Source: Ranitomeya imitator (taxonomy: Eukaryota). From it: a stretch of DNA of 64,000 nt. The position numbers and the translations under genes were made by a program. The notes beneath the pieces are model-generated. The model saw only the letters and a program-made list of their open reading frames with translations. It was not told the origin of the DNA and ran no database searches. Positions 1,976 through 63,765 of the stretch are shown in pieces. Location: contig NC_091288.1 in NCBI RefSeq assembly GCF_032444005.1, positions 201,934,001 to 201,998,000 of the forward strand. The letters are read 5' to 3'. Every line of letters begins with the position of its first letter. Position 1 is the stretch's first letter.

Positions 1976-2005
1976 TTTGGGGTGAGGAGCGGAGCACGGA
2001 NNNNN

Positions 2006-2565
<560 letters not shown>

Positions 2566-2880: not shown

Positions 2881-5011
2881 GATGTACTAGATTTTCTCGG
2901 CACCACCATCCGCATGTGGGGTGCTGCTGTAATCCCGTTCATTATCCTCATTTTTCCTCTGCACATTCCCACATCCAGCCAAGTGATCGCGGGGTCCAGT
3001 ATACTCATCAGCATTGCCAATACTTCGATATGTAGCAAAGAAGGAGTGGTGTAAAAATTTGGGGGGCATTTTGAGGGCAACCCAAACGTTGTGCCCCACC
3101 AAAAAATGTCCCGGTTGACCCAAAACATTCTGAAAAAAATTACCACACACTCTTATAGTGTTCCTCTACACACCCTGAGAATTTGTGGTCGACAGACCCA
3201 AACCGGGCTTAGCAGTGACCTTGCGCAACACAGACTTCAATGGGCAGGGTCACTTTGGGGAGTCTCTGCTCAGCCCAGTTTGTGGCTATCATCAACCCCA
3301 AATGTTCAGGGTGTGTAGCTCTAGTGGACCAGTGCTGTAAAAATTTAGGGGGCATTTTGAGATGACCCAAAACATATGCCCCTCCCCACCCCCAAACTTC
3401 TGAACAAATTACCCGACACTCTTGAATTGTTCCTCTACACACCCTGAACATTTGGGGTCGATGGGCACAAACTAGGCTGAGCAGTGACCCTGCGCGCGAT
3501 AGGCTTCCATGGGCAGGGCAGCTTTGGGGGGTAACTGCTCAGCAGTGCACAGATTGGGGCTATCGACTTCAAATTTTCATAGTGTGTAGAGGAATAATTC
3601 ATGAGTGTGGGCTATTTTTTTTCTGAATACCTTGCTCTATATACTGTACACACTGCTCTAGATATTGTACACTGCTCTATATACTGTACACACTGCTCTA
3701 TATATTGTATACTGCTCTATATACTGTACACTGATTTACATACTGTACCCTCTCCTGTATATACTGTACACACTGCTACTGTACACTCTGGTCTATATAC
3801 TGTGTACTCTGCTGTATATACTGTACACACTGCTCTATATACTGTACGCTCTGGTCTATAATACTGTACACTGCTGTATATACTGTTCACACTGCTCTAT
3901 ATACTGTACACTGCTCTAAATACTGTACACACTGCTCTATATACTGTATATACTGTATATATACTGTATATATTGCTGTATATATACTGTATATATACTG
4001 TATATATTGCTGTATATACTGTACAATCTGTTGCACAGTCTGTATACACTGCTGTATATACTGCATACTCTGCTCTATATACTGTACACACGGCACTATG
4101 CTATACACTGCTCTATATACTGTACACTCTGGTCTATAAACTGGACACTGCTGTATATACTGTACTCTGCTTTATATACTGTACACACTGTTGTATATAC
4201 TGTAGACTCTCCTCTATTATCTGTGACACTTATTACACTGCTGATCTGGGCTGTGCAGATGTGATGTTGTGCACTATATATACTATATACAGCTGTGTTC
4301 TCTGTGTAGACGCTGGATTTTGTGTCTCCGCTTTTCTCCCAATATTCCCCTTTTGCACAACAGTGGGGGTCACATACATGCATGAATATTTCAGTTTTCT
4401 CCCGAGATGTTCATGTGTTTGGTTGGGGAGTCGCGCTGTGCAGCTGTCGCCTCATCAGAGCTCTTCCCTCCATTACAGGCCGCAGCGGTCACAGCTTCAC
4501 ACTGGGTAAGACACGATATCAGGCAGGTGATTGCAATCAGCCCCCGATATGGATCATCTACTGATGTGGAACACGTGTCCCCCCAATACTCTGCACATAC
4601 GGGGTAGAGTGATATCACAGGTCAGGGAGGTGGCAGTCAGCGGAGGCCGTCGCCTGTGTTACCCTTCTGGGTTCTCAGCAGCTCCAGCTGGTCCCCACAT
4701 CGTACAATCAGCTTCCTGTGCGATAGACACTGGAGTAAAGATCCCTGTGATGGTGACAAGAGCCGGGAATAGGAGGAACGAGCTCCCGCAGCAGATTTAT
4801 CTACCCGGACACACAGTGATGTGCAGATCGGGAGGACGGCGGCGATAATCTCCGCAATTTCTAGGCGTTTCCACTAGTGACGGCTACAAACGGTCGGTGG
4901 AGATGATGGAGAAGGAGAAGCGACGGAGGAATCGCGCTCTGCTGTCCGGTGTTAGCCGGTAAAGGGTTTTTATCCCGGGCAGGGAAGCACAAGGGGAGAG
5001 CGGAGCTTCAC
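2881..5011 (+). repeat. Long inverted repeat, left arm (TE-like composite)
   Basis: Reverse complement of 13447-16141, starting GATGTACTAG. Contains ~270-bp imperfect palindromic subunits and a satellite. Copies at 23574-25704 and 44291-46423. Confidence 0.9.
3625..4205 (+). repeat. Degenerate satellite (TATATACTGTACACACTGCTC)n
   Basis: Visible units of about 19-21 bp; source of the YILYTLL-type ORFs. Confidence 0.9.
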
Positions 5012-5381: not shown

Positions 5382-5984
5382 GAGCCACCACCTCCTCCCC
5401 GCAGAGCTGTATGATCAGTGCCACCACCTTCTCCCAACAGAGCTGTATGATCAGTGCCACCACCTCCTCCTCGCAGAGCTGTATGATCAGTGCCACCACC
5501 TCCTCCCCGCAGAGCTGTATGATCAGAGCAACCACCTTCTCCCCACAGAGCTGTATGATCAGTGCCATCACCCACTCCCCGCAGAGCTGTATGATCAGTG
5601 CCACCACCTCCTCGCAGAGCTGTATGATCAGTGCCACCACCTCCTCCCCACGGAACTGTATGATCAGTGCCACCGCCTCCTCCCCGCAGAGCTGTATGAT
5701 CAGTGCCACCACCTCCTCCCCGCAGAGCTGTATGATCAGTGCCACCACCTCCTCCTCCCTGCAGAGCTGTATGATCAGTGCCACCACCTCCTCCTCCCCG
5801 CAGAGCTGTATGATCAGTGCCACCACCTCCTCCTCCCCGCAGAGCTGTATGATCAGTGCCACTACCTCCTCCCCGCAGAGCTGTATGATCAGAGCAACCA
5901 CTTCCTCCCCAGCAGAGCTATATGATCAGTGCCACCACCTTCTCCCCACAGAGCTGTATGATCAGTGCCACCACCTTCTCCCCT
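5382..5984 (+). repeat. 36-bp minisatellite, inverted orphan array (about 16 copies)
   Basis: Same unit on the + strand, starting GAGCCACCACCTCC. Copies at 26075-26677 and 46794-47396. Confidence 0.95.
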
Positions 5985-8254: not shown

Positions 8255-8358
8255 AATGAGCTCGTCTTGAGGGAGGATTTAGTGGCTCTGAAAAGAGCCT
8301 TTGTGTTGTGGTCGGTGCCGGGGCAGATCTAAGCTCTCTCCCCACGGATCCGGCGGGC
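8255..8358 (-). pseudogene. H3: H3 3' remnant (ARRIRGERA*, 3' UTR, stem-loop, HDE region)
   Basis: 8284-8358 is nearly identical to 10178-10252, and looser homology continues about 25 nt past the stem-loop. Copies at +20,693 and +41,412. Confidence 0.9.
8284..8299 (-). terminator. Orphan histone 3' stem-loop (H3 remnant)
   Basis: GGCTCT TTTC AGAGCC following the H3 C-terminal remnant; recurs in units 2 and 3. Confidence 0.9.
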
Positions 8359-8588
8359 TTGGGAAAACCAGGTTTGTCTTTCTAGGTCAAAATATTGGAA
8401 AAGACTCTGGTCCCAGATCACACACTGCGGGCACATCCCAGAATCTGGATAATGCGGCTTCATTCCTTCGACCGGGAACCCAAAGCATTAGTGGCTCAGT
8501 AAAGGTTCTAAACGATATATTAACTTTAAAACCACCAGGAACAAGAGCGCAGGAATAGGAAGGTGCAGCCTCTCACTGAGATGTGGGT

Positions 8589-8604
8589 GGCTCTGAAAAG
8601 AGCC
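8589..8604 (-). terminator. Histone 3' stem-loop (H4a)
   Basis: GGCTCT TTTC AGAGCC ACCCA followed by HDE-like GAGAGGCTG. Confidence 0.95.
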
Positions 8605-8634
8605 TTTGGGTTGTGAGGACAGAAGAGAACACAA

Positions 8635-9145
<511 letters not shown>

Positions 9146-10177
9146 TTATTGTGCTCTTATTTCCCCGCTTCTCTATTCTTCTCATCTCGGCGCCGCTGCT
9201 AGATCTGTTGGTTATTTCGATTTTTTTTCATTGTTATTTATGTTGCTAGTTTCCAGCTTCTGCCAAATGTTAGCTAGTAGAATAAAAAATATATTCTAGG
9301 GACAATAATCTACAGAAAACTCGTGATCCCCGGCAGTCACTCATCATTACACGTGGTGCCGGACTGGCGGCCATTACCGGTCCCTCAGAGCAGGGAGCTG
9401 CATGTAACCAGTCACCCTGCGGCTCCAGCCCTGGAGAAGATGGGAAAAGTCAAATATACGAGAATTGCTTAACGACCCACCCACCACAAATGCGACCATC
9501 GCAGCACACGGGGGAGGGATCTGCTCAGACCAGTGTCAGGCAGAATAGATCACATAAAGGCGTCATCACCGATCTGAGGGACAAATGAGGTTATTAACAG
9601 AAACTAAGCGCAGAGATCTCCGATCCGAACAAAAGAGAACAACCTAAAGCCGCAAGACTGAGGAGGCGGCACTAGGACCCAGCGCGTGAGACAGCAGATT
9701 GTGATCGGTTATGATCCTCAGGAGCGCGAGCAGCAAATGAGCGGGAATTTCAAATCCACCAGCGGATCGGTAAATGACCACAAAACATCAGCATAAAGAA
9801 CCGTTCTCAGGAACCGACCAATCACCGATTACTTTTACTCCATTAACTCAATAGTGACCGCGTTCCTGCAGATCCACCCCATTTACGTCTGCACTGTATA
9901 GGAACCGCACATCCACCACCGCAAACCCGGTTGTGCACTGTACACACTTTACGCGGTCCTTATAACACGTCGGTTTTGTTATAGATGTCGGACACTTTTG
10001 GACTGGGCGAGAATAGAGAATGTGCAGAGCGATAACCAATATCGCTGATCACCTGCAATATCGGAAGCAGCAGCCTCCGTCCATTTAACTGATCGACCGT
10101 GCCTGCGCTTCGTACACTGAGAATACGCGCAGAAAAGGGACTGCTCAGGAATCGGCTCATTTGGGAGAGACTTTGGT

Positions 10178-10850: not shown

Positions 10851-11039
10851 TTCCGTGATGCGTCTGTCCTCAGATCACTCATTTGCCGCTTGCTGGAGCA
10901 GCTGATGTATTTGCGTTCAAATGTCCCCGTGTATAGCGCTGTACAGTGCAGCTCCCGCAATATCGACAGATCACACAAACCCCCCATCCTGAGACTGCGC
11001 CCAGCATCAGTTATATTACAAACATTAGAAGTCCGAGAA

Positions 11040-12588
11040 CTAATCATACAGCTCTGCGGGGAGGAGGCGGTGGCACTGATCATACAGCTCTGTGGGGAGG
11101 AGGTGGTGGCTCTGATCATACAGCTCTGTGGGGAGAAGGTGGTTGCTCTGATCATACAGCTCTGCGGGGAGGAGGTAGTGGCACTGATAATACAGCTCTG
11201 CGGGGAGGAGGTAGTGGCACTGATCATACAGCTCTGTGGGGAGAAGGTGGTTGCTCTGATCATACAGCTCTGCGAGGAGGAGGTGATGGCACTGATCATA
11301 CAGCTCTGCGGGGAGGAGGTGGTGGCACTGATCATACAGCTCTGCGGGGAGGAGGTGGTGGCTCTGATCATACAGCTCTGTGGGGAGAGGTGGTGGCACT
11401 GATCATACAGCTCTGCTGGGGAGGAGGTGGTTGCTCTGATCATACAGCTCTGCGGGGAGGAGGTAGTGGCACTGATCATACAGCTCTGCGGGGAGGAGGT
11501 AGTGGCTCTGATCATACAGCTCTGCGGGGAGAATGTGATGGCTCTGATCATACAGCTCTGCTGGGGAGGAGGTGGTGGCTCTGATCATACAGCTCTGTGG
11601 GGAGAAGGTGGTTGCTCTGATCATACAGCTCTGCGGGGAGGAGGTAGTGGCACTGATAATACAGCTCTGCGGGGAGGAGGTAGTGGCACTGATCATACAG
11701 CTCTGTGGGGAGAAGGTGGTTGCTCTGATCATACAGCTCTGCGAGGAGGAGGTGATGGCACTGATCATACAGCTCTGCGGGGAGGAGGTGGTGGCACTGA
11801 TCATACAGCTCTGTGGGGAGAAGGTGGTTGCTCTGATCATACAGCTCTGCGGGGAGGAGGTGGTGGCACTGATCATACAGCTCTGCGAGGAGGAGGTGGT
11901 GGCACTGATCATACAGCTCTGCGGGGAGTGGGTGATGGCACTGATCATACAGCTCTGCGGGGAGGAGGTGGTGGCACTGATCATACAGCTCTGCGGGGAG
12001 GAGGTGGTGGCACTGATCATACAGCTCTGCGGGGAGGAGGTAGTGGCTCTGATCATACAGCTCTGCGGGGAGAATGTGATGGCTCTGATCATACAGCTCT
12101 GCTGGGGAGGAGGTGGTGGCTCTGATCATACAGCTCTGTGGGGAGAAGGTGGTTGCTCTGATCATACAGCTCTGCGGGGAGGAGGTAGTGGCACTGATAA
12201 TACAGCTCTGCGGGGAGGAGGTAGTGGCACTGATCATACAGCTCTGCGGGGAGGAGGTGGTGGCACTGATCATACAGCTCTGTGGGGAGAAGGTGGTTGC
12301 TCTGATCATACAGCTCTGCGGGGAGGAGGTGGTGGCACTGATCATACAGCTCTGCGAGGAGGAGGTGGTGGCACTGATCATACAGCTCTGCGGGGAGTGG
12401 GTGATGGCACTGATCATACAGCTCTGCGGGGAGGAGGTGGTGGCACTGATCATACAGCTCTGCGGGGAGGTGGTGGCACTGATCATACAGCCCTGTGGGG
12501 AGGAGGTAGTGGCACTGATCATACAGCTCTGCTGGGAGGAGGTGTTGGCACTGATCATACAGCTCTGCGGGGAGGAGGTGGTGGCTCT
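11040..12588 (-). repeat. 36-bp minisatellite of the H1 3' processing signal (about 43 copies)
   Basis: Minus-strand unit GCCACCACCTCCTCCCCGCAGAGCTGTATGATCAGT; the first copy begins inside the H1 stem-loop 3' arm. Confidence 0.95.
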
Positions 12589-12598
12589 TATAAGAGCC
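12583..12598 (-). terminator. Histone 3' stem-loop (H1)
   Basis: GGCTCT TATA AGAGCC ACCAC, with HDE AGAGCTGTA 16 nt downstream. Confidence 0.93.
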
Positions 12599-12607
12599 TT
12601 TGTGGTA

Positions 12608-13264
12608 TCAGAACAGGGGCTGCAGCTTATTTCTTAGCCGCGGGCTTCTTGGCTTTCGCAGCCTTCTTAACCGACTCTTGGCGGGTTTGGCCGCCTTCTT
12701 AGCCGGACTCTTCGTCACCTTCTTGGGCTTGGGAGCGGCTTTCGGCTTTTTGGGGCTCTTGGCCGCTTTCTTGGCAGCTGCGGGCTTCTTGGCCTTTTTC
12801 GGGCTCTTCTTGGCCGCGGTCGGAGCCTTCTTGGGCTTCTTCGGAGATTTGGCGGCTTTCTTGGCAGCAGCGGGTTTCTTAGGTTTGGCCGCAGCTGCTG
12901 GCTTCTTCTTGGCCACTTTGTCCTTCGTCTCCTGCTTCTTGTTCAGCTTGAAGGACCCGGAGGCGCCGCTGCCCTTCACCTGGAGGAGGGCGCCCTTGGT
13001 GACCAGAGACTTGACGGCCAGCTTCAGGCGGCTGTTGTTCTTCTCTACATCGTATCCTCCGGCAGACAGAGCCTTCTTCAGGGCGGCCAGAGACACCCCG
13101 CTGCGCTCCTTGGAGGCGGACACGGCTTTCACGATCAGCTCGGAGACGCTGGGGCCGGAGGGTTTATTGCTCTTCTTGGCAGCAGATTTCTTCGGCTGCT
13201 TCTTGGATTTGGCGGCCGGTTCTGCGGGAGGGGGAGCGGCGGCTGGCGCGGTCTCTGCCATCAT
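12608..13264 (-). CDS. H1: Linker histone H1 with frameshifted C-terminus (218 aa)
   Basis: [16 protein letters not shown], globular domain [13 protein letters not shown]...[10 protein letters not shown] and a K/A/P-rich tail. A 1-bp deletion near 12670 gives the tail [22 protein letters not shown]. Stem-loop at 12583-12598. Confidence 0.93.
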
Positions 13265-16141: not shown

Positions 16142-17373
16142 AGCCTCATTCTGGAGAGGTGCTGACATGAAGGATTGATCAGCTCTCCGTGAGAGAGAGC
16201 GAGAAAGAAAGAGAGAGAGAAAGCCTGATGTGACGCTACCGGGTCTCGGGTGGGGGAAGTCGCCGGTTCTGTAAAGCGAGTGTGTAGTGGGGGTCAGCAC
16301 ACACACGGCGACTAAGGAGTTAAATGGAGGCGGATATTCCTGTATCTGGGATTGGTCGGCGCCTGCGGATGTCTCTCGCTCATTGGCTGATTACAGATCC
16401 GTTGATGGTTTTGAATTTCCCGCTCAATATCTGTTCTTTGTCCGTCGGATTATTACCGGCCCCTCTGCTGGAGCGGCGATCGCCGATAATACCGGGTCCT
16501 GTCCTCCCAGCTGTCTGCCCCCAAACACGGGGATCGGTTTGCTTATCGGTTGCCATTAATATTCTGGGGAGGTTATAATAGTCTTCAGAGGCGCCTTCCA
16601 TCCGAAACATTAGTGTCCAGGACGTGGTCATCACATAGGAGTCTCCGTACCCGGTACACAGGGCGTCCGTCTATCCAGCTGCCTCAGACAGCCACATTCC
16701 CTGTGAATATTCGCTGCCCCCTGTTCAGTATAACATCAAGTAGCAGAATCAACACATTCATCTCACGGCAGGACTGTAGTAACCGCATCACTCCGGGGTT
16801 TGTACTGTGTGCATAGAGGGGCCTCCGGGAGGCAGTGTGCGGATATATCCCCCATAAATCTGTGAGGTTTGAGATCAATAAGAAGAAACCGCATCACCCG
16901 AAGTTTGCGGTGCCGGCTCTAGTATGGAAAGACGGGGAGGAAAATAAGAGGGGAGAGTAGAGAAGACACGTCCCAGGCTGTGACCGATACTACAGGCAGC
17001 CGCACGGGGGATATTGTGCCCTGCAGAGACGCTGCGCCCGATACTAATCAGCGCCCAATAAAAGCAGGATCTTAGGACAACATCTTAACAGATTTAGAAA
17101 ACGCCGGGAGTTGCTCCGTTATTAGAGCTGTAGAGGGATCTGCTTGGGAAAACCAGGTTAGTCTTTCTAGGTCAAAATATTGGAAAAGACCCTAGTCCCA
17201 GATCACACACTGCGGGCACATCCCAGAATCTGGATAATGCGGTTTCATTCCTTCGACCGGGAACCCACAGCATTAGTGGCTCAGTAAAGGTTCTAAACGA
17301 TATATTAACTTTATAACCACCAGGAACCAGAGCGCAGGAATAGGAAGGTGCAGCCTCTCACTGAGATGTGGGT

Positions 17374-17389
17374 GGCTCTGAAAAGAGCC
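17374..17389 (-). terminator. Histone 3' stem-loop (H4b)
   Basis: Same sequence as the H4a stem-loop. Confidence 0.95.
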
Positions 17390-17419
17390 TTTGGGTTGTG
17401 AAGACAGAAGAGAACACAA

Positions 17420-17740
<321 letters not shown>

Positions 17741-17779
17741 TCAGTGAGCAAAAACTGATTCCTGGACAGCACGGACTGC

Positions 17780-17925
17780 TCCTTTATATGGAGGAAGAAT
17801 GGACCAGAGAGAGAACTGCAGAGATGACGCACTTCCGGGACGGGTCTTCCAGAATCTACATTTGCCCCTCCCTTCCTCTGCTGATTGGCTGACCACAGAA
17901 CTGTTGGGACGTTTGAGTTTCCCGC
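17780..17925 (-). promoter_or_regulatory. H4b promoter
   Basis: Same motif order as H4a (GCGGGAAACTCAAA, CCAAT, GGTCC, CATATAAA) but with diverged spacing sequence. Confidence 0.75.
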
Positions 17926-18049
17926 TCATTGGTCATATTCTGCAATTATCTTCCCAGCTTGTATTTTATGCAATTTCTTTCCCTTGTGACTAAAGATATC
18001 CCACATATTTTCATCACCGTTCCAGATCATCGTGGTTCATACCATCCAC

Positions 18050-18320
18050 AATGTATGATGCCCCCACTTATCCCGCACACAGTATGCTGCCCCCAAAGTT
18101 ATCCTCCACATAGTATGATGCCCCCTACACAGCAAGATAACCACACAGTAGGATGCCCCCACAGTTACTGTTTAAGGGTATGATATCCCCAGTTACTCCG
18201 AAAACAGTATGATGCCCTAAGTTACCCCCCCCCCCCCCCCCCCCAACACACACACACACACACACACACACAGGAAATATGCTGCACCCACAGTTACACC
18301 CTATACAATGTGATACCCCC
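18050..18320 (+). repeat. Degenerate ~30-bp repeat (AGTATGATGCCCCC...) with poly-C and (CA)n
   Basis: GTATGATGCCCC core recurs about 7 times; the (CA)n tract is shorter in unit 3. Confidence 0.75.
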
Positions 18321-18941
18321 AGAGCGACCCATCCTCAGTGTAATGTAATGATTAACAATTGTTCATGTTATGGTGAAAGTCTTCCATTAATGGAGATTTG
18401 GAAGGGTGAAAGAAGCAAGAGAAATTAGAAGAGATATTTCATCAGATCAACATCTGGTGATGAAATGTTCATTTTTGCCATTACCTCATGTACAAATCAC
18501 AAACCAGAGAGACACATTTTTATGCAGTTTTTTATATATCATGTTATGCTTTAGTAATGCAAAATCACATGACTGGGCCTTTAATTGTAAAGTACAAATT
18601 ATTAGGGGTTTTTTTGCTTCTTTTTCATTGTTTGTCTTAATGTGAAAACTGTACTGGCAGCAAAAGGGTTAAAAAACCAGTGTAACAGAAAAATGATCCC
18701 TACTACATTGCCCTCTATAGTGCCAGAGGCATTTACTCTCTTACAACCAGGACTTACTTCTTAGGCGTTAGGGCAGTGAACCCATTAAATGCTGCAGGTC
18801 AGTTACTGGGTAGCTGTATGATGGCTCCTGGGTCCCAGTAGGGCACTGTATGAAATACCAGGTCGGATCCACTGCCAATTACAGCACAAAGCCATTTTTG
18901 GCAGTGAAATCTGAGTAAGAAAAGTCCCTTCAACATCCACA

Positions 18942-19477
18942 CCAGTAGCAATATGCATCGTGCATCCCCCCATAAAGTGGTTTTGACGTCCTGCAGCAGT
19001 GACAGGGGAGTCTAGCGAAGATAATCGCTGTTTTTCGGCAAGGAACATTCCATGTTATCCAAATCAATTTTCTTTATGACCCCAGTGGCCCATTCTGGTG
19101 GGCGCTCCTGCCGGCCCCAACAACGTCCCCGTCTGCCATTTGCGTTTCTTTTATCGTGTGCTCCAGCCAGTCTCTTCCATGCTGTTCGGAGGGATCAGTG
19201 TCCCCATTGCAGTTTGGGCTACACAGCGAGAAGGATTTCACAAGCCTTTAATGCCACTGGCCGGTCACAGTCACACAGACAAGTCAATAAGGCCGGAAAA
19301 AGCCCGACTCTTTCACATGTAACCAGAGCGTCGGAGATGGAACCTGAGCTTCTGCTAGATGGCAGCCCTATAGTGTAAGGGCACGTTAGGGACGGCCCCA
19401 TCTCCAATATTTGTGACATATACACATATAGGAATCCTTAGCCAAACAGTAAACACCTTTACCAAAGTCACGGTTTG
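18942..19477 (-). pseudogene. BRAT1: BRAT1 C-terminal fragment, decayed
   Basis: Minus frame gives CPYTIGLP...DAL...VGLFPALLTCLCDCDRPVALKACEILLAV* then PEWATGVIKKIDLDNMECSLPKNSDYLR*TPLSLLQDV and, after a frameshift, HDAYCY. This matches human BRAT1 as recalled: CPYAVALP...EAL...[29 protein letters not shown]...[38 protein letters not shown]...EADCY. Three in-frame stops. Confidence 0.88.
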
Positions 19478-19665
19478 TTTCGAAGTCCGACAGCCGAGCA
19501 GGTGCGTTTGGAGGTCTGGCAGCAGGGCAGCGCATTTCGAGATCCAACAGCTGTGGAGGTGCGTTTCAAGATCCGACAGCCAACGAAGAGTATTTCGATG
19601 TCCGACAGCCGGGTAGATGTGCTTCGAGGTCCAGCAGCCGCGGCGGAGTGATTCGAGGTCCTGTC
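19478..19665 (+). repeat. Seven-copy 29-bp repeat with conserved head and variable tail
   Basis: Units start at 19478, 19507, 19535, 19564, 19593, 19622 and 19651; head TTTCGAGGTCCGACAGC. Copies at 40171-40358 and 60050-60237. Confidence 0.85.
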
Positions 19666-20423
19666 ACGTAGATATATATCCAGTTAGTGCAGTGTACGGG
19701 GGAACACAGGTGTTGGTTCTGCCCCGTATATATATATTTACAGTGTATACATTGTTTGCGGTGTATAGGGAACACAGCGCTACCGGGGCCTGGGGTGAAG
19801 GTGCCGCATCTTTGGATACTCTGATGAGAGATCAGCTGGAACACGGAAAATAAGAAGTTAAATGGAGGAGACACGTCTGTGTACCTGATGTACGTAGATG
19901 TCTCTCCTCCATTTAACGTCCTATTTTCAAGGCTGAGCTTTCCCAAGGCTGCCCGCTCATTGTCTTATCACATGATCCTTTGGGGGATTTGAGTTTCCCG
20001 CTCATAATCTCTGGAGGATTATTACCGGTCACTGCCGATAGCGGAGATCACAATCCGGTCACACCCGGAACAGCGCGGAGTCCTGTCCTCCAGAGCCGCC
20101 GCACACGGGATCGTCCTCCGAGAGAAGGCGCCGTCACTGATGTGGAGGAGAATCACCCGCCCGGTCCCGATACTCCGGGACCTGCTAACTACATGTAGAC
20201 CTCAGCGCGGAGTATCAGACACTAATGAGGGGACATTTCCTGCGAGCTTGGCAGACGACACTCCCACCTGAGGGGTCTGAGACTTCATGTGGGATTGACC
20301 CATTCATCTCCTATTATTCTGTGGATATGTGCACCAACAATGGCGGCAATGGTGTATGTACCATCAGCCTCATGTGAGGACCCCGAGATAGGCGGCGCCG
20401 GCTCTTGTGGTGACGGTGTGGGT

Positions 20424-20439
20424 GGCTCTTAGAAGAGCC
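20424..20439 (-). terminator. Histone 3' stem-loop (H2A)
   Basis: GGCTCT TCTA AGAGCC ACCCA followed by HDE-like AAGAGCCG. Confidence 0.95.
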
Positions 20440-20468
20440 TTTGGTTTTGTAGACATTGGCGGCAGCGC

Positions 20469-20930
<462 letters not shown>

Positions 20931-21438
20931 TTATATAGTCTGCTGCTCCGCCCTCCTCTCCTGTCATTGGATGACTCTGAAGCTGGCCAATGGGGAAGAG
21001 TCTTGAGGAACCGCCAATGAGCTGCCGAGGGCGGAGCCTATTATTGCTCCTTGCTCAAATTAGTTTCTCACCCAATAGAAAACGTTCGCTTTGGACCGAA
21101 TAGATAAGGGGTGAAAACAGATATTTGTCTTGGAGCAGAAGGAAGTGCAGAAATATTCTGTTGATTTGTAGTTTGCACTTGTTGAATTTGTGTCTACTAT
21201 CAGCCATAAATTGCACTGACAGTCTGGTGGGTGAGGGGTTAATCCCTGTCAGTGCTTCTCCTCCGCTCCATCTGCACAGGAGGCGGCTCCTCACTCACCC
21301 GCTTATTACCCTGTGTAGATTCCCTGTGGTGTCCGCGCTGATCCTATCACAGCCTGACTGAGACAAGTCTCCTATGTTCTGCCCGGAGCCTGATGTGACG
21401 CTGCCGGGTCCCGGGTGGGGGAAGTCGCCGCTTCTGTA

Positions 21439-21780
21439 TTGTATGATACAATATTGTTCTGCTCCAGGAAGACATCCAGGCCTCTCTTGAACCCCTCGAC
21501 TGAGTTCGCCATCACCACCTCCTCAGGCAAGCAATTCCAGATTCTCACCGCCCTAACAGTAAAGAATCCTCTTCTATGTTGGTGGAAAAACCTTCTCTCC
21601 TCCAGACGCAAAGAATGCCCCCTTGTGCCCGTGGCCTTGGTATAAACCTTGGTATAAACAGATCCTCAGCGAGATATTTCTATTGTCCCCTTATATACTT
21701 ATACATGGTTATTAGATCGCCCCTCAGTCGTCTTTTTCTAGACTAAATAATCCTAATTTCGCTAATCTATCTGGGTATTG
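21439..21780 (-). mobile_element. CR1-family LINE fragment
   Basis: Copy of 722-1063. Confidence 0.88.
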
Positions 21781-22698
21781 TAGTTCTCAATACCCAGATA
21801 GTGGTAATGTTCTGAGCAGGGACACTCCGCAATCTTCTACACATGATCGTACATTTCCCATCACAGAGGGATCTGCTGGGAAGGGCAGAATTGGTCTTCC
21901 CTGAAATGTCTCTTGTAGGATATGTCCCTGACCAGTATATCGTCTGCACAGTACTGATTGTGACGGGAAAGGGACGATCTGATCGTCTCCAGGTCAGGCA
22001 CACGGGCACATCACAGCATGTGGAGAACACGAATCAGTCTCTATATCTATGAGTGGAAACAGGAGCGAATACTGCACCGCTAACCTGGAAATCTGCAGAC
22101 TCCTGTGTGGGATGTAAGAGAGCAATGATCGCTCAACACAAGCAGATTTCCCGATATCGGTCCTGGGAGCACGTGTCATATGAAGACAAAGGACGGAAAA
22201 AAGCGGGAACTTTAAACTTTTTACCATTGGAAACATTAGCTCCTCCCTCTGCTGATTGGCTGAACACAGGACGGTTAGGGGGGTTTGAATTTCCCGCCGC
22301 TTCTAAATGTAATGACGTCATTTACACTGTAAAAAGAATTCAATTAGGCTCTAGATCAACTCCACCGACCACCACAAATGGCTCCTGTTAACGGAGAAAG
22401 GAGAGTAATGAACGAGACCCCAGAATGCCGAGATCTGTGCAGCAAGGGGTTAAATAAGTCCCTGAATACACATCAACTCACTGAGCAATGCCCAGATTAT
22501 TCCTGAGGTTTTCTCACCATCTCCCTCGTCATCAGACGCAGAGCCCCGGGCGGTGCGAGCAGACACCTCGGGGAGACGGGAGAGGACACCGGAGCAGTGT
22601 GGGTGGCTCTTATAGTGAGGGTGTAGGTGGCTCTTATAGGGAGGGTGTGGGTGGCTCTTAGAAGAGCCTTTGGGGTGAGGAGCGGAGCACGGANNNNN

Positions 22699-23175
<477 letters not shown>

Positions 23176-39634: not shown

Positions 39635-40170
39635 CCAGTAGCAATATGCATCGTGCATCCCCCCATAAAGTGGTTTTGACGTCCTGCAGCAGTGACAGGG
39701 GAGTCTAGCGAAGATAATCGCTGTTTTTCGGCAAGGAACATTCCATGTTATCCAAATCAATTTTCTTTATGACCCCAGTGGCCCATTCTGGTGGGCGCTC
39801 CTGCCGGCCCCAACAACGTCCCCGTCTGCCATTTGCGTTTCTTTTATCGTGTGCTCCAGCCAGTCTCTTCCATGCTGTTCGGAGGGATCAGTGTCCCCAT
39901 TGCAGTTTGGGCTACACAGCGAGAAGGATTTCACAAGCCTTTAATGCCACTGGCCGGTCACAGTCACACAGACAAGTCAATAAGGCCGGAAAAAGCCCGA
40001 CTCTTTCACATGTAACCAGAGCGTCGGAGATGGAACCTGAGCTTCTGCTAGATGGCAGCCCTATAGTGTAAGGGCACGTTAGGGACGGCCCCATCTCCAA
40101 TATTTGTGACATATACACATATAGGAATCCTTAGCCAAACAGTAAACACCTTTACCAAAGTCACGGTTTG
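39635..40170 (-). pseudogene. BRAT1: BRAT1 C-terminal fragment, decayed
   Basis: Copy in unit 2. Confidence 0.88.
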
Positions 40171-42473: not shown

Positions 42474-43415
42474 TAGTTCTCAATACCCAGATAGTGGTAA
42501 TGTTCTGAGCAGGGACACTCCGCAATCTTCTACACATGATCGTACATTTCCCATCACAGAGGGATCTGCTGGGAAGGGCAGAATTGGTCTTCCCTGAAAT
42601 GTCTCTTGTAGGATATGTCCCTGACCAGTATATCGTCTGCACAGTACTGATTGTGACGGGAAAGGGACGATCTGATCGTCTCCAGGTCAGGCACACGGGC
42701 ACATCACAGCATGTGGAGAACACGAATCAGTCTCTATATCTATGAGTGGAAACAGGAGCGAATACTGCACCGCTAACCTGGAAATCTGCAGACTCCTGTG
42801 TGGGATGTAAGAGAGCAATGATCGCTCAACACAAGCAGATTTCCCGATATCGGTCCTGGGAGCACGTGTCATATGAAGACAAAGGACGGAAAAAAGCGGG
42901 AACTTTAAACTTTTTACCATTGGAAACATTAGCTCCTCCCTCTGCTGATTGGCTGAACACAGGACGGTTAGGGGGGTTTGAATTTCCCGCCGCTTCTAAA
43001 TGTAATGACGTCATTTACACTGTAAAAAGAATTCAATTAGGCTCTAGATCAACTCCACCGACCACCACAAATGGCTCCTGTTAACGGAGAAAGGAGAGTA
43101 ATGAACGAGACCCCAGAATGCCGAGATCTGTGCAGCAAGGGGTTAAATAAGTCCCTGAATACACATCAACTCACTGAGCAATGCCCAGATTATTCCTGAG
43201 GTTTTCTCACCATCTCCCTCGTCATCAGACGCAGAGCCCCGGGCGGTGCGAGCAGACACCTCGGGGAGACGGGAGAGGACACCGGAGCAGTGTGGGTGGC
43301 TCTTATAGTGAGGGTGTAGGTGGCTCTTATAGGGAGGGTGTGGGTGGCTCTTATAGGGAGGGTGTGGGTGGCTCTTAGAAGAGCCTTTGGGGTGAGGAGC
43401 GGAGCACGGANNNNN

Positions 43416-43892
<477 letters not shown>

Positions 43893-59513: not shown

Positions 59514-60049
59514 CCAGTAGCAATATGCATCGTGCATCCCCCCATAAAGTGGTTTTGACGTCCTGCAGCAGTGACAGGGGAGTCTAGCGAAGATAATCGC
59601 TGTTTTTCGGCAAGGAACATTCCATGTTATCCAAATCAATTTTCTTTATGACCCCAGTGGCCCATTCTGGTGGGCGCTCCTGCCGGCCCCAACAACGTCC
59701 CCGCCTGCCATTTGCGTTTCTTTTATCGTGTGCTCCAGCCAGTCTCTTCCATGCTGTTCGGAGGGATCAGTGTCCCCATTGCAGTTTGGGCTACACAGCG
59801 AGAAGGATTTCACAAGCCTTTAATGCCACTGGCCGGTCACAGTCACACAGACAAGTCAATAAGGCCGGAAAAAGCCCGACTCTTTCACATGTAACCAGAG
59901 CGTCGGAGATGGAACCTGAGCTTCTGCTAGATGGCAGCCCTATAGTGTAAGGGCACGTTAGGGACGGCCCCATCTCCAATATTTGTGACATATACACATA
60001 TAGGAATCCTTAGCCAAACAGTAAACACCTTTACCAAAGTCACGGTTTG
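59514..60049 (-). pseudogene. BRAT1: BRAT1 C-terminal fragment, decayed
   Basis: Copy in unit 3. Confidence 0.88.
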
Positions 60050-62352: not shown

Positions 62353-63288
62353 TAGTTCTCAATAGAATTGTAGTTCTCAATACCCAGATAGTGGTAATGT
62401 TCTGAGCAGGGACACTCCGCAATCTTCTACACATGATCGTACATTTCCCATCACAGAGGGATCTGCTGGGAAGGGCAGAATTGGTCTTCCCTGAAATGTC
62501 TCTTGTAGGATACGTCCCTGACCAGTATATCGTCTGCACAGTACTGATTGTGACGGGAAAGGGACGATCTGATCGTCTCCAGGTCAGGCACACGGGCACA
62601 TCACAGCATGTGGAGAACACGAATCAGTCTCTATATCTATGAGTGGAAACAGGAGCGAATACTGCACCGCTAACCTGGAAATCTGCAGACTCCTGTGTGG
62701 GATGTAAGAGAGCAATGATCGCTCAACACAAGCAGATTTCCCGATATCGGTCCTGGGAGCACGTGTCATATGAAGACAAAGGACGGAAAAAAGCGGGAAC
62801 TTTAAACTTTTTACCATTGGAAACATTAGCTCCTCCCTCTGCTGATTGGCTGAACACAGGACGGTTAGGGGGGTTTGAATTTCCCGCCGCTTCTAAATGT
62901 AATGACGTCATTTACACTGTAAAAAGAATTCAATTAGGCTCTAGATCAACTCCACCGACCACCACAAATGGCTCCTGTTAACGGAGAAAGGAGAGTAATG
63001 AACGAGACCCCAGAATGCCGAGATCTGTGCAGCAAGGGGTTAAATAAGTCCCTGAATACACATCAACTCACTGAGCAATGCCCAGATTATTCCTGAGGTT
63101 TTCTCACTATCTCCCTCGTCATCAGACGCAGAGCCCCGGGCGGTGCGAGCAGACACCTCGGGGAGACGGGAGAGGACACCGGAGCAGTGTGGGTGGCTCT
63201 TATAGTGAGGGTGTAGGTGGCTCTTATAGGGAGGGTGTGGGTGGCTCTTAGAAGAGCCTTTGGGGTGAGGAGCGGAGCACGGANNNNN

Positions 63289-63765
<477 letters not shown>

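What the first reader, a model, noticed from the sequence alone, without database searches (positions are those of the whole stretch)
18942..19477. A BRAT1 C-terminal fragment is carried in every histone repeat unit
Seen: one minus-strand frame gives SQILEMGPSLTCPYTIGLP...VGLFPALLTCLCDCDRPVALKACEILLAV*, then PEWATGVIKKIDLDNMECSL...TPLSLLQDV, and after a 1-nt shift HDAYCYW. This aligns by eye to about aa 645-821 of human BRAT1 (DCDRPVA, SLLQD, terminal ADCY*). It has three stops plus indels and is present in all three units. Known: BRAT1 binds the Integrator cleavage module INTS9-INTS11, its C-terminal tail engages the INTS11 active site, and BRAT1 loss has been reported to impair snRNA and replication-dependent histone pre-mRNA processing. 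Inference: a piece of a 3'-processing regulator was captured and amplified along with its substrates. It cannot encode the intact tail. It may be a passenger, or a multicopy source of sense, antisense or small RNAs acting on BRAT1. A 66-aa ORF (ATG at 19419) covering the DCDRPVA HEAT segment remains open.
Basis: partly seen in the sequence, partly recalled or inferred. Interest (0 to 1): 0.85.

Follow-up and report, generated by a model that had tools for sequence, protein, structure and literature searches.

The report
Dead BRAT1 fragment in frog histone repeats
Each unit of this poison-frog (Ranitomeya imitator) histone gene array carries a broken, non-coding copy of the last quarter of the BRAT1 gene; it most likely hitch-hiked when the array was amplified and shows no sign of doing anything.

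Summary
Window 18942-19462 (minus strand) is a BRAT1 C-terminal fragment. tblastn gives E = 2e-68 to Ranitomeya imitator BRAT1, and the 68-aa open piece gives E = 1.4e-8 to human BRAT1. The fragment occurs once per histone repeat unit, in all three units.

The window is not from Xenopus. The exact H1 protein and the gene spacing place it in R. imitator, on the same 227-Mb chromosome record as the intact BRAT1 gene.

The fragment covers only about aa 609-820 of 820 and lies entirely within the last coding exon. Its lesions are:
- a deletion of about 108 nt and an 8-nt duplication;
- two nonsense codons;
- frameshifting indels (-2, +6/-7, -5);
- Asp-to-Tyr in the invariant C-terminal tail;
- loss of the stop codon.

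It has 13 private replacements against 3 in its parent, and many hit residues conserved across 27 frogs.

Best reading: a decaying partial pseudogene that is a passenger of array amplification, probably copied at the DNA level from the linked parent gene. BRAT1's role in histone mRNA processing looks like coincidence. Transcription and small-RNA output could not be tested.

Interest is low to moderate.

The parts
18942..19462 (-). BRAT1 pseudogene fragment, copy 1 (parent aa ~609-820 with an internal deletion), lying between H2A and H4
   Evidence: tblastn of R. imitator BRAT1 P0029 gives E = 2e-68. DNA alignment to an unspliced frog BRAT1 contig, L003, is 76% over 19422-18937.
39635..40155 (-). 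BRAT1 pseudogene fragment, copy 2 (offset +20693)
   Evidence: blastn gives 99.9% identity over 1001 nt. No difference inside the fragment.
59514..60034 (-). BRAT1 pseudogene fragment, copy 3 (offset +40572)
   Evidence: blastn gives 99.6% identity over 1001 nt. One difference inside the fragment, equivalent to 19132.
19436..19462 (-). Probable 5' end patch (VKVFTVWLR, parent aa 611-619). About 36 parental codons (aa 620-656) are deleted just downstream of it.
   Evidence: Collinear extra tblastn hits with E = 4e-4 (P0021) and 0.002 (P0029). A 28-nt DNA match to L002 at 86%.
19410..19425 (-). 8-nt tandem duplication (TATATGTG/TATATGTC) that shifts the frame. It holds the GTG (19425) and ATG (19419) starts of the residual ORF.
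   Evidence: Sequence and comparison with L003 and P0029.
19219..19419 (-). Residual 66-aa ORF (68 aa from the GTG at 19425) covering parent aa ~660-725. It ends at the first nonsense codon, TAG 19221-19219 (parent Lys).
   Evidence: No protein of 37-119 aa resembling it in the 5.8-billion set.
19195..19212 (-). 2-nt deletion (parental CTATGC now CTGC) causing a frameshift. TGA 19197-19195 is the resulting out-of-frame stop.
19107..19130 (-). 6-nt insertion (extra Val-Val) followed by a deletion of about 7 nt that returns reading to the first frame
   Evidence: Two-frame tblastn alignment to P0029. Sequence.
19012..19014 (-). Second nonsense codon, TAG, in place of a Glu conserved in 25 of 27 frogs
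18942..18968 (-). Damaged C-terminal tail: 5-nt deletion (GGE region), Asp-to-Tyr at 18953-18951 (Asp invariant in 27 frogs), and parental stop changed to TGG at 18944-18942 (reading runs on to TGA 18932-18930)
20399..20861 (-). Upstream neighbour: histone H2A gene (CDS 20861-20472, stop 20471-20469) and its 3' stem-loop (20444-20399). The fragment starts about 940 nt downstream of it on the same strand.
   Evidence: ORF. Rfam RF00032, 33.2 bits.
17351..17731 (-). Downstream neighbour: histone H4 gene (second copy in the unit) and its 3' stem-loop (17394-17351)
   Evidence: ORF. Rfam RF00032, 35.4 bits.
19478..19667 (.). About six degenerate 29-nt tandem repeats abutting the 5' end of the fragment. 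Not BRAT1-derived as far as can be seen.
   Evidence: the repeat finder family D1. No convincing alignment to the BRAT1 exon.

Best explanation
This is a non-coding, decaying partial pseudogene of BRAT1. A piece of the last coding exon (about aa 609-820) of the frog's own BRAT1 gene was copied into the H2A-H4 spacer of a histone repeat unit. The copy was made in the Ranitomeya lineage, after its split from Dendrobates and before the R. imitator / R. variabilis split. It was then multiplied passively when that roughly 20-kb unit was amplified and homogenised by unequal crossing-over or gene conversion.

Shown: identity, extent, lesions, one copy per unit, accelerated protein-level change, and linkage to the parent gene. 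Inferred: a DNA-level (non-retro) origin favoured by that linkage, and absence of function. BRAT1's known role in Integrator assembly and histone pre-mRNA processing is taken to be coincidental.
For: Identity: (E down to 2e-68; collinear to the last residue).

Disabling lesions shared by all copies: two nonsense codons, four or more frameshifting indels, a deletion of about 108 nt, a lost stop codon, and 74% of the protein missing.

Phylogeny: the fragment sits inside the Dendrobates+Ranitomeya clade (support 100/98) and outside R. imitator + R. variabilis (97/81). Its end branch is 0.12 against 0.014-0.034 for the intact genes.

Relative rate: 13 private changes against 3 in R. imitator BRAT1 (p about 0.01-0.02) and against 5 in R. 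variabilis (p about 0.06-0.1). The private changes hit positions conserved in 23-27 of 27 anuran BRAT1s, including Ser-to-Pro and the tail Asp-to-Tyr at invariant positions.

Hitch-hiking: units 1 and 2 differ by 1 nt in 20,375, and units 2 and 3 are 99.1-99.8% identical. The fragment is simply part of the homogenised unit.

Source and linkage: the exact H1 protein, with H2B/H2A/H3 spacings matching the window, is on R. imitator GCA_032444005.1 contig HqpLrVfQ (226,787,878 bp). That is the contig carrying BRAT1 P0029. The same H2A protein and BRAT1 also share a 9.96-Mb contig in D. tinctorius and a 249.8-Mb contig in R. variabilis.

No sign of use: no protein of comparable size resembles the residual ORF in 5.8 billion proteins. 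No inverted copy exists that could form double-stranded RNA.
Against: Neutrality is not proven. No parental DNA could be fetched, so dN/dS and age from synonymous sites were not computed.

The relative-rate excess is moderate, and only borderline against R. variabilis.

The first 68 codons carry only 2 of the 13 private changes (expected about 5.6; one-sided p about 0.08). This could be chance or weak constraint.

Transcription, small RNAs and presence in other species' arrays could not be examined.

The functional coincidence (a factor needed for histone pre-mRNA 3' processing sitting in a histone array, in sense orientation 0.9 kb downstream of an H2A 3' end) is a priori unlikely for a random gene.
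Confidence: 0.85

Rival explanations
1. Same passenger pseudogene, but of retro origin. A 5'-truncated, LINE-mediated reverse transcript of BRAT1 mRNA landed in the spacer before the unit was amplified.
For: 5' truncation with the 3' end of the coding region retained is the usual shape of LINE-mediated retrocopies (general knowledge). An A-rich stretch lies about 320 nt past the former stop codon, near 18607-18625.
Against: The fragment lies wholly inside the last exon. That exon starts at about aa 589, as shown by the splice acceptor in L003 and by the Spea gene. No exon junction is spanned, so intron loss cannot be shown.

No AATAAA signal and no clear poly(A) tail were seen.

The only flanking direct repeat (17904-17929 / 19980-20005) belongs to an 18-mer motif found six times per unit, so it is not a target-site duplication. 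About 515 nt of unrelated DNA separates it from the fragment's 5' end.

The parent gene is on the same chromosome, which favours local DNA-level copying.
Confidence: 0.25
2. The multicopy fragment is a working RNA source. Read-through from H2A (sense) or antisense transcription through the spacer gives long or small RNAs that modulate BRAT1 mRNA. This would couple histone-array transcription or failed 3' processing to the level of an Integrator assembly factor.
For: The fragment is on the same strand as all histone genes, about 940 nt downstream of the H2A stem-loop, so failed 3' cleavage would transcribe it. [quoted passage not shown] With only 13+3 amino-acid differences in 155 codons from the parent, long exact nucleotide matches to BRAT1 mRNA are likely (inference). 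Pseudogene-derived small RNAs acting on parent genes are known in mouse oocytes (own knowledge).
Against: No data on transcription were available. Sense read-through RNA cannot pair with BRAT1 mRNA. There is no inverted copy or hairpin of the fragment in the window. No promoter-like arrangement was seen upstream: the nearby 18-mer motif lacks the CCAAT box that accompanies it at H4. The decay pattern is as expected without constraint.
Confidence: 0.05
3. The residual 66-aa ORF (19419-19222) is translated into a HEAT-like peptide that competes with BRAT1 for INTS9/INTS11.
For: The ORF is open and differs from the parent at only 2 of 66 residues. It contains the conserved CDCDRPVALKAC segment.
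Against: Its start codon arose inside an 8-nt duplication and has a poor context (T at -3, T at +4). No promoter is evident. No predicted protein of 37-119 aa resembles it anywhere in 5.8 billion sequences. It is a fragment of one helical repeat out of an 820-aa solenoid and lacks the C-terminal tail. The low number of changes is not significantly below expectation (p about 0.08).
Confidence: 0.02
4. Chance similarity or an assembly artefact (a misjoined BRAT1 read copied into the array).
For: Units 1 and 2 are almost identical (1 difference in 20,375 nt), as could happen if an assembler copied a unit.
Against: E-values of 2e-68 exclude chance. The fragment is diverged and broken relative to the same genome's BRAT1, so it is not a misplaced read of the real gene. 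Unit 3 is a distinct copy (0.2-0.9% different) and carries the same lesions.
Confidence: 0.01

Closest known systems
BRAT1 (BRCA1-associated ATM activator 1 / Integrator complex assembly factor BRAT1), R. imitator XP_069590443.1 (P0029)
   Same: The fragment is collinear with aa ~609-820. It is 87% identical over 165 frame-corrected columns. It includes the CDCDRPVALKAC and TPLSLLQD motifs and the remains of the HDADCY terminus.
   Different: 74% of the protein is missing. It has two nonsense codons, several frameshifts, an internal deletion, a mutated tail and no stop codon. It is not a functional member.
Gene-fragment pseudogenes carried in the spacers of tandem gene arrays (for example the CDC27 pseudogene in the human rDNA intergenic spacer; own knowledge, not checked here)
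   Same: A disabled piece of an unrelated gene sits at one fixed place in every repeat unit. It owes its copy number to array amplification and homogenisation, not to its own function.
   Different: Here the array is a roughly 20-kb histone unit in a dendrobatid frog, and the captured gene happens to act in the histone mRNA 3'-end pathway. No report of a BRAT1 pseudogene turned up in the held literature. A broader search on histone clusters, tandem arrays, pseudogenes and frogs and a 250-species histone-locus review (PMC13525598) did not mention BRAT1 either.
Duplicated (non-processed) partial pseudogenes from intrachromosomal segmental duplication
   Same: Parent and copy lie on the same chromosome record. 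The copy is a truncated piece of genomic sequence that is decaying.
   Different: A DNA-level origin is inferred, not shown. No intron or flanking genomic sequence of the parent could be compared, because the parental DNA was not retrievable.
Pseudogene-derived endo-siRNA / piRNA sources (mouse oocyte pseudogene siRNAs; Drosophila Su(Ste); own knowledge)
   Same: A multicopy, parent-like sequence in a heavily transcribed germline-active locus could in principle give such RNAs.
   Different: No antisense or inverted arrangement exists in the window. No expression data are available. Nothing tested here supports membership.

Membership tests
BRAT1 protein family (functional member) | Significant, collinear sequence similarity to named BRAT1 orthologues | tested here: met
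   Human BRAT1 PDB chains, E = 1.4e-8. R. imitator BRAT1, E = 2e-68. 30+ amphibian orthologues all hit the same stretch.
BRAT1 protein family (functional member) | Full-length (~820 aa) helical-repeat protein with an intact reading frame | tested here: not met
   Only aa ~609-820 is present. Two nonsense codons, four or more frameshifting indels and a ~108-nt deletion.
BRAT1 protein family (functional member) | Intact free C-terminal tail (…HDADCY-COOH in frogs), reported to enter the INTS11 active site (own knowledge of the 8R22/8UIB structure papers) | tested here: not met
   5-nt deletion just before it, Asp-to-Tyr at a position invariant in 27 frogs, and stop codon changed to Trp with a 4-residue extension.
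BRAT1 protein family (functional member) | Match to Pfam PF28344 (BRAT1) | tested here: inconclusive
   The local Pfam copy lacks this model: even full-length P0029 does not hit it. Precomputed tables list PF28344 for the orthologues.
Processed (retro-) pseudogene | Introns absent across at least one exon junction | not testable with these tools
   The fragment lies within the last exon only. The exon start, at about aa 589, was mapped in L003 and Spea L001.
Processed (retro-) pseudogene | Poly(A) tail and flanking target-site duplications | tested here: inconclusive
   No AATAAA and no clean poly(A), only an A-rich patch at about 18607-18625. The flanking 26-nt repeat is part of a motif present six times per unit.
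Hitch-hiking pseudogene in a tandem array | One copy at the same position in each unit, sharing the same lesions | tested here: met
   Three copies at spacings of 20693 and 19879 nt, with 0-1 differences inside the fragment.
Hitch-hiking pseudogene in a tandem array | Evolution without protein-level constraint | tested here: met
   13 private changes against 3 (p about 0.01-0.02). End branch 0.12 against 0.014-0.034. Hits at invariant residues. A formal dN/dS test was not possible.
Pseudogene-derived regulatory RNA locus | Antisense or inverted-repeat arrangement able to give double-stranded RNA | tested here: not met
   All three copies are direct and on the histone-gene strand. There is no inverted copy in 64 kb.
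Pseudogene-derived regulatory RNA locus | Transcription and small RNAs mapping to the fragment | not testable with these tools
   No expression data are accessible. The only indirect hint is negative: no ORF-sized product was called in any assembly of the protein collection.

The most novel reading that the evidence does not exclude
The fragment is kept, or at least used, as an RNA sensor. When histone 3'-end processing fails, H2A transcripts read through into dozens of BRAT1-like copies. These transcripts, or antisense or small RNAs made from them in the germline, adjust the level of BRAT1 mRNA. This would form a feedback loop between the histone array and an Integrator/U7-pathway assembly factor.
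Probability: 0.04. Interest if true: 0.75.

Novelty: new member of a known kind. Interest (0 to 1): 0.28.

Why it matters
As it stands, this is mainly an annotation point. A multicopy BRAT1 pseudogene fragment in the R. imitator histone array could mislead read mapping, gene prediction or BRAT1 expression estimates.

It is also a convenient marker. It dates the present repeat unit to the Ranitomeya stem lineage and can be used to follow amplification and homogenisation of a vertebrate tandem histone array.

Only if the fragment's RNA proved to act on BRAT1 would it become a notable case of a processing factor wired to its substrate locus. Nothing found here points that way.

Tried and rejected
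Searches and steps that led nowhere:
- A megablast against phage records was irrelevant.
- The short later pieces of the fragment gave no hit against PDB.
- The 68-aa ORF found no candidate in the 5.8-billion protein set.
- The local Pfam library lacks the BRAT1 model, so a family-model test was uninformative.
No dN/dS, no 3'UTR or end-point mapping and no cross-species array comparison were possible.
- tblastx of the whole H2A-H4 spacer against the Spea BRAT1 locus found only the last exon and no neighbouring-gene pieces.
- Pfam scan of nine other ORFs in the unit found no further captured gene fragments; the tenth ORF scanned was H1, which hit Linker_histone as expected.

Ideas considered and rejected:
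Xenopus BRAT1 is only about 37% identical.
- The 26-nt flanking direct repeat as a target-site duplication. It is a recurrent motif.
- Upstream 29-nt repeats as BRAT1 exon sequence. The alignment is unconvincing.
- Constraint on the 66-aa ORF. The deficit of changes is not significant.

Full report
**1. What is in the sequence**

The window holds three near-identical units of a tandem histone array, with periods of 20,693 and 19,879 nt. All genes of a unit lie on the minus strand. Reading 5' to 3', they are:
- H2B, whose core is N-masked and which I did not try to fill;
- H2A (CDS 20861-20472);
- the feature in question;
- H4 (17731-17420);
- H1 (about 13264-12611);
- H3 (10633-10226);
- a second H4 (8946-8635).

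Histone 3' stem-loops follow H2A (20444-20399) and both H4 genes.

**2. Is it BRAT1?**

Yes.
- The 68-aa open piece matches human BRAT1 (PDB 8r22/8uib) at aa 666-724 with E = 1.4e-8. The next hit is at E = 0.7.
- A full-library HMMER search with that piece returned only BRAT1-type proteins.
- tblastn with those proteins gives a single collinear hit per unit, running to the last residue of BRAT1.
- Among 30+ amphibian orthologues, the best is Ranitomeya imitator BRAT1 (P0029), at E = 2e-68. Dendrobates tinctorius follows. Xenopus is far down at about 37%.

So the animal is a dendrobatid, not Xenopus.

**3. Source genome and linkage to the parent**

The exact H1 protein of the window is encoded on R. 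imitator GCA_032444005.1, contig code HqpLrVfQ (226,787,878 bp). Its H2B, H2A and H3 neighbours lie at the spacings seen in the window. The same contig carries R. imitator BRAT1, although no histone gene lies within 10 kb of BRAT1.

The window's exact H2A protein also occurs in two other places that hold BRAT1:
- on the D. tinctorius contig that holds BRAT1 (9,962,215 bp; 12 or more H2A places);
- on the R. variabilis 249.8-Mb record that holds BRAT1.

BRAT1 and a histone array are thus linked in this group of frogs. In D. tinctorius they lie within 10 Mb of each other.

**4. Anatomy of the fragment**

I compared the fragment with P0029 in all frames and with the DNA of an unspliced hyloid BRAT1 contig, L003. 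The fragment corresponds to parent aa ~609-820. In order, its parts and lesions are:
- a short 5' patch (19462-19436, VKVFTVWLR);
- a deletion of about 36 codons;
- an 8-nt tandem duplication, which also created the ORF's start codons;
- 68 nearly unchanged codons ending in TAG (Lys to stop, 19221-19219);
- a 6-nt insertion and a deletion of about 7 nt that restore the frame;
- TAG for Glu at 19014-19012;
- a 5-nt deletion;
- Asp-to-Tyr in the terminal HDADCY;
- the stop codon changed to TGG.

The last exon of frog BRAT1 begins at about aa 589. This is shown by the splice acceptor in L003 and by the Spea gene structure.

**5. When it arose and how it has evolved**

I built a maximum-likelihood tree of 27 anuran BRAT1 C-termini plus the frame-corrected fragment, with X at every stop and frameshift.
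- The fragment falls inside the Dendrobates+Ranitomeya clade (support 100/98).
- It falls outside R. imitator + R. variabilis (97/81).
- Its end branch is 0.12, against 0.014-0.034 for the intact genes.

With D. tinctorius as outgroup, the fragment has 13 private changes (11 missense, 2 nonsense) against 3 in its own parent (p about 0.01-0.02). Against R. variabilis the count is 13 to 5 (p about 0.06-0.1). Eight of the private changes hit positions conserved in 23-27 of 27 frogs, two of them invariant. This is what loss of constraint predicts.

The 68-codon open part holds 2 of the 13 changes, where about 5.6 would be expected (p about 0.08). That is not enough to claim constraint.

The three copies carry no information on selection. 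Units 1 and 2 differ by 1 nt in 20,375. Units 2 and 3 differ by 0.2-0.9%, and only one difference falls inside the fragment.

**6. Surroundings**

No inverted copy of the fragment exists in the window.

A 26-nt direct repeat brackets the 2.05-kb segment that holds the fragment. Its 18-nt core, which includes the E2F-like TTTCCCGC, occurs six times per unit, so it is a recurrent spacer or promoter motif and not a target-site duplication. Next to H4 it is followed by a CCAAT box. Upstream of the fragment it is not.

No poly(A) signal or tail is evident downstream.

No other captured gene piece was found in the spacer or in the unit's ORFs.

**7. Interpretation**

The best reading is a partial BRAT1 pseudogene that entered the H2A-H4 spacer once, in the Ranitomeya stem lineage. 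It was then carried to multicopy by amplification and homogenisation of the unit, and it is decaying.

Linkage of parent and array gives an ordinary reason for the capture and favours a DNA-level copy. A 5'-truncated retrocopy is not excluded.

- BRAT1 binds INTS9/INTS11.
- Its loss lowers U7 snRNA and leaves unprocessed replication-dependent histone transcripts (PMC9418311).
- Later work calls it a chaperone of the cleavage module (PMC13335351).

That the tail enters the INTS11 active site rests on my own knowledge of the structure papers behind 8R22 and 8UIB.

Nothing in the sequence links that biology to the fragment. The RNA-source idea remains possible, because the fragment is in sense orientation 0.9 kb downstream of the H2A processing site, so read-through would transcribe it. 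It is untested, and I rate it at a few per cent. No report of a BRAT1 pseudogene turned up in the held literature. A broader search on histone clusters, tandem arrays, pseudogenes and frogs and a 250-species histone-locus review did not mention BRAT1 either.

**8. Verdict**

This is a new example of a known kind of thing, of low to moderate interest.

Noticed in passing
window 19836-19938 (arms 19846-19884 / 19890-19928), once per unit: A near-perfect 39-nt-arm hairpin between the H2A 3' end and the BRAT1 fragment. As RNA it folds at -45.2 kcal/mol, z = -7.9 against shuffles. Rfam gives only weak sub-threshold plant-miRNA-like matches. It could be a foldback or MITE remnant or a hairpin RNA. 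Its nature is unknown.
   Followed up: partly
window 7541, 9132, 9737, 16410, 17912, 19988 (and the same places in units 2 and 3): An 18-nt motif, TTTGAGTTTCCCGCTCAT, containing an E2F-like TTTCCCGC. It occurs six times per unit, where 0.01 would be expected by chance. One copy sits about 180 nt upstream of each H4 start, next to a CCAAT box. It is a candidate cell-cycle element of the array.
   Followed up: partly
window 2881-5011 versus 16141-13447: Each unit contains a large internal inverted repeat (84-93% identity, about 2-3 kb arms) rich in short tandem repeats. It brackets the H4-H3-H1 part of the unit.
   Followed up: no
window 5382-5983 and 11039-12591: Two blocks of a 36-bp satellite (about 90% between repeats), in opposite orientation to each other. 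Its copies give long spurious ORFs. The 814-nt length difference of unit 3 maps to the part of the unit that holds the second block.
   Followed up: partly
window 8357-9151 versus 17142-17931: The two H4 genes of a unit are a duplication with flanks (92% over about 800 nt). The duplication ends at the 18-mer motif.
   Followed up: partly
units 2286-22693 versus 22979-43410: Units 1 and 2 differ by a single base (18809) in 20,375 nt, while unit 3 differs by 0.2-0.9%. This means either very recent duplication or conversion, or assembler or polishing collapse. Worth checking with long reads.
   Followed up: no
window 12611-12680 (H1 C-terminus): The H1 ORF ends in an Arg/Leu-rich tail (…[22 protein letters not shown]) instead of the usual Lys/Ala-rich end. 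This looks like a frameshifted C-terminal tail. The same 218-aa product is annotated in the R. imitator assembly, but without a Pfam hit on record there.
   Followed up: no
whole unit, e.g. 20469-23079: All histone genes of the unit, including H2A and H2B, are on one strand. In D. tinctorius places holding the identical H2A protein, H2B is divergently oriented about 320 nt away. The array unit here is therefore a rearranged layout.
   Followed up: no
window 19478-19667: About six degenerate copies of a 29-nt repeat directly abut the 5' end of the BRAT1 fragment. Tandem Repeats Finder did not report them, even at its lowest score setting. Whether they arose at the capture junction is unknown.
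   Followed up: partly
window 18037-18330: A spacer block of about 30-nt repeats (CACAGTATGATGCCCCC-type), a C20 run and (AC)13 lies between the fragment and the H4 promoter.
   Followed up: no
window 2001-2285, 22694-22978, 43411-43695, 63284-63568: The four N runs (285 nt each) all fall inside the H2B coding region, one per unit.
   Followed up: no
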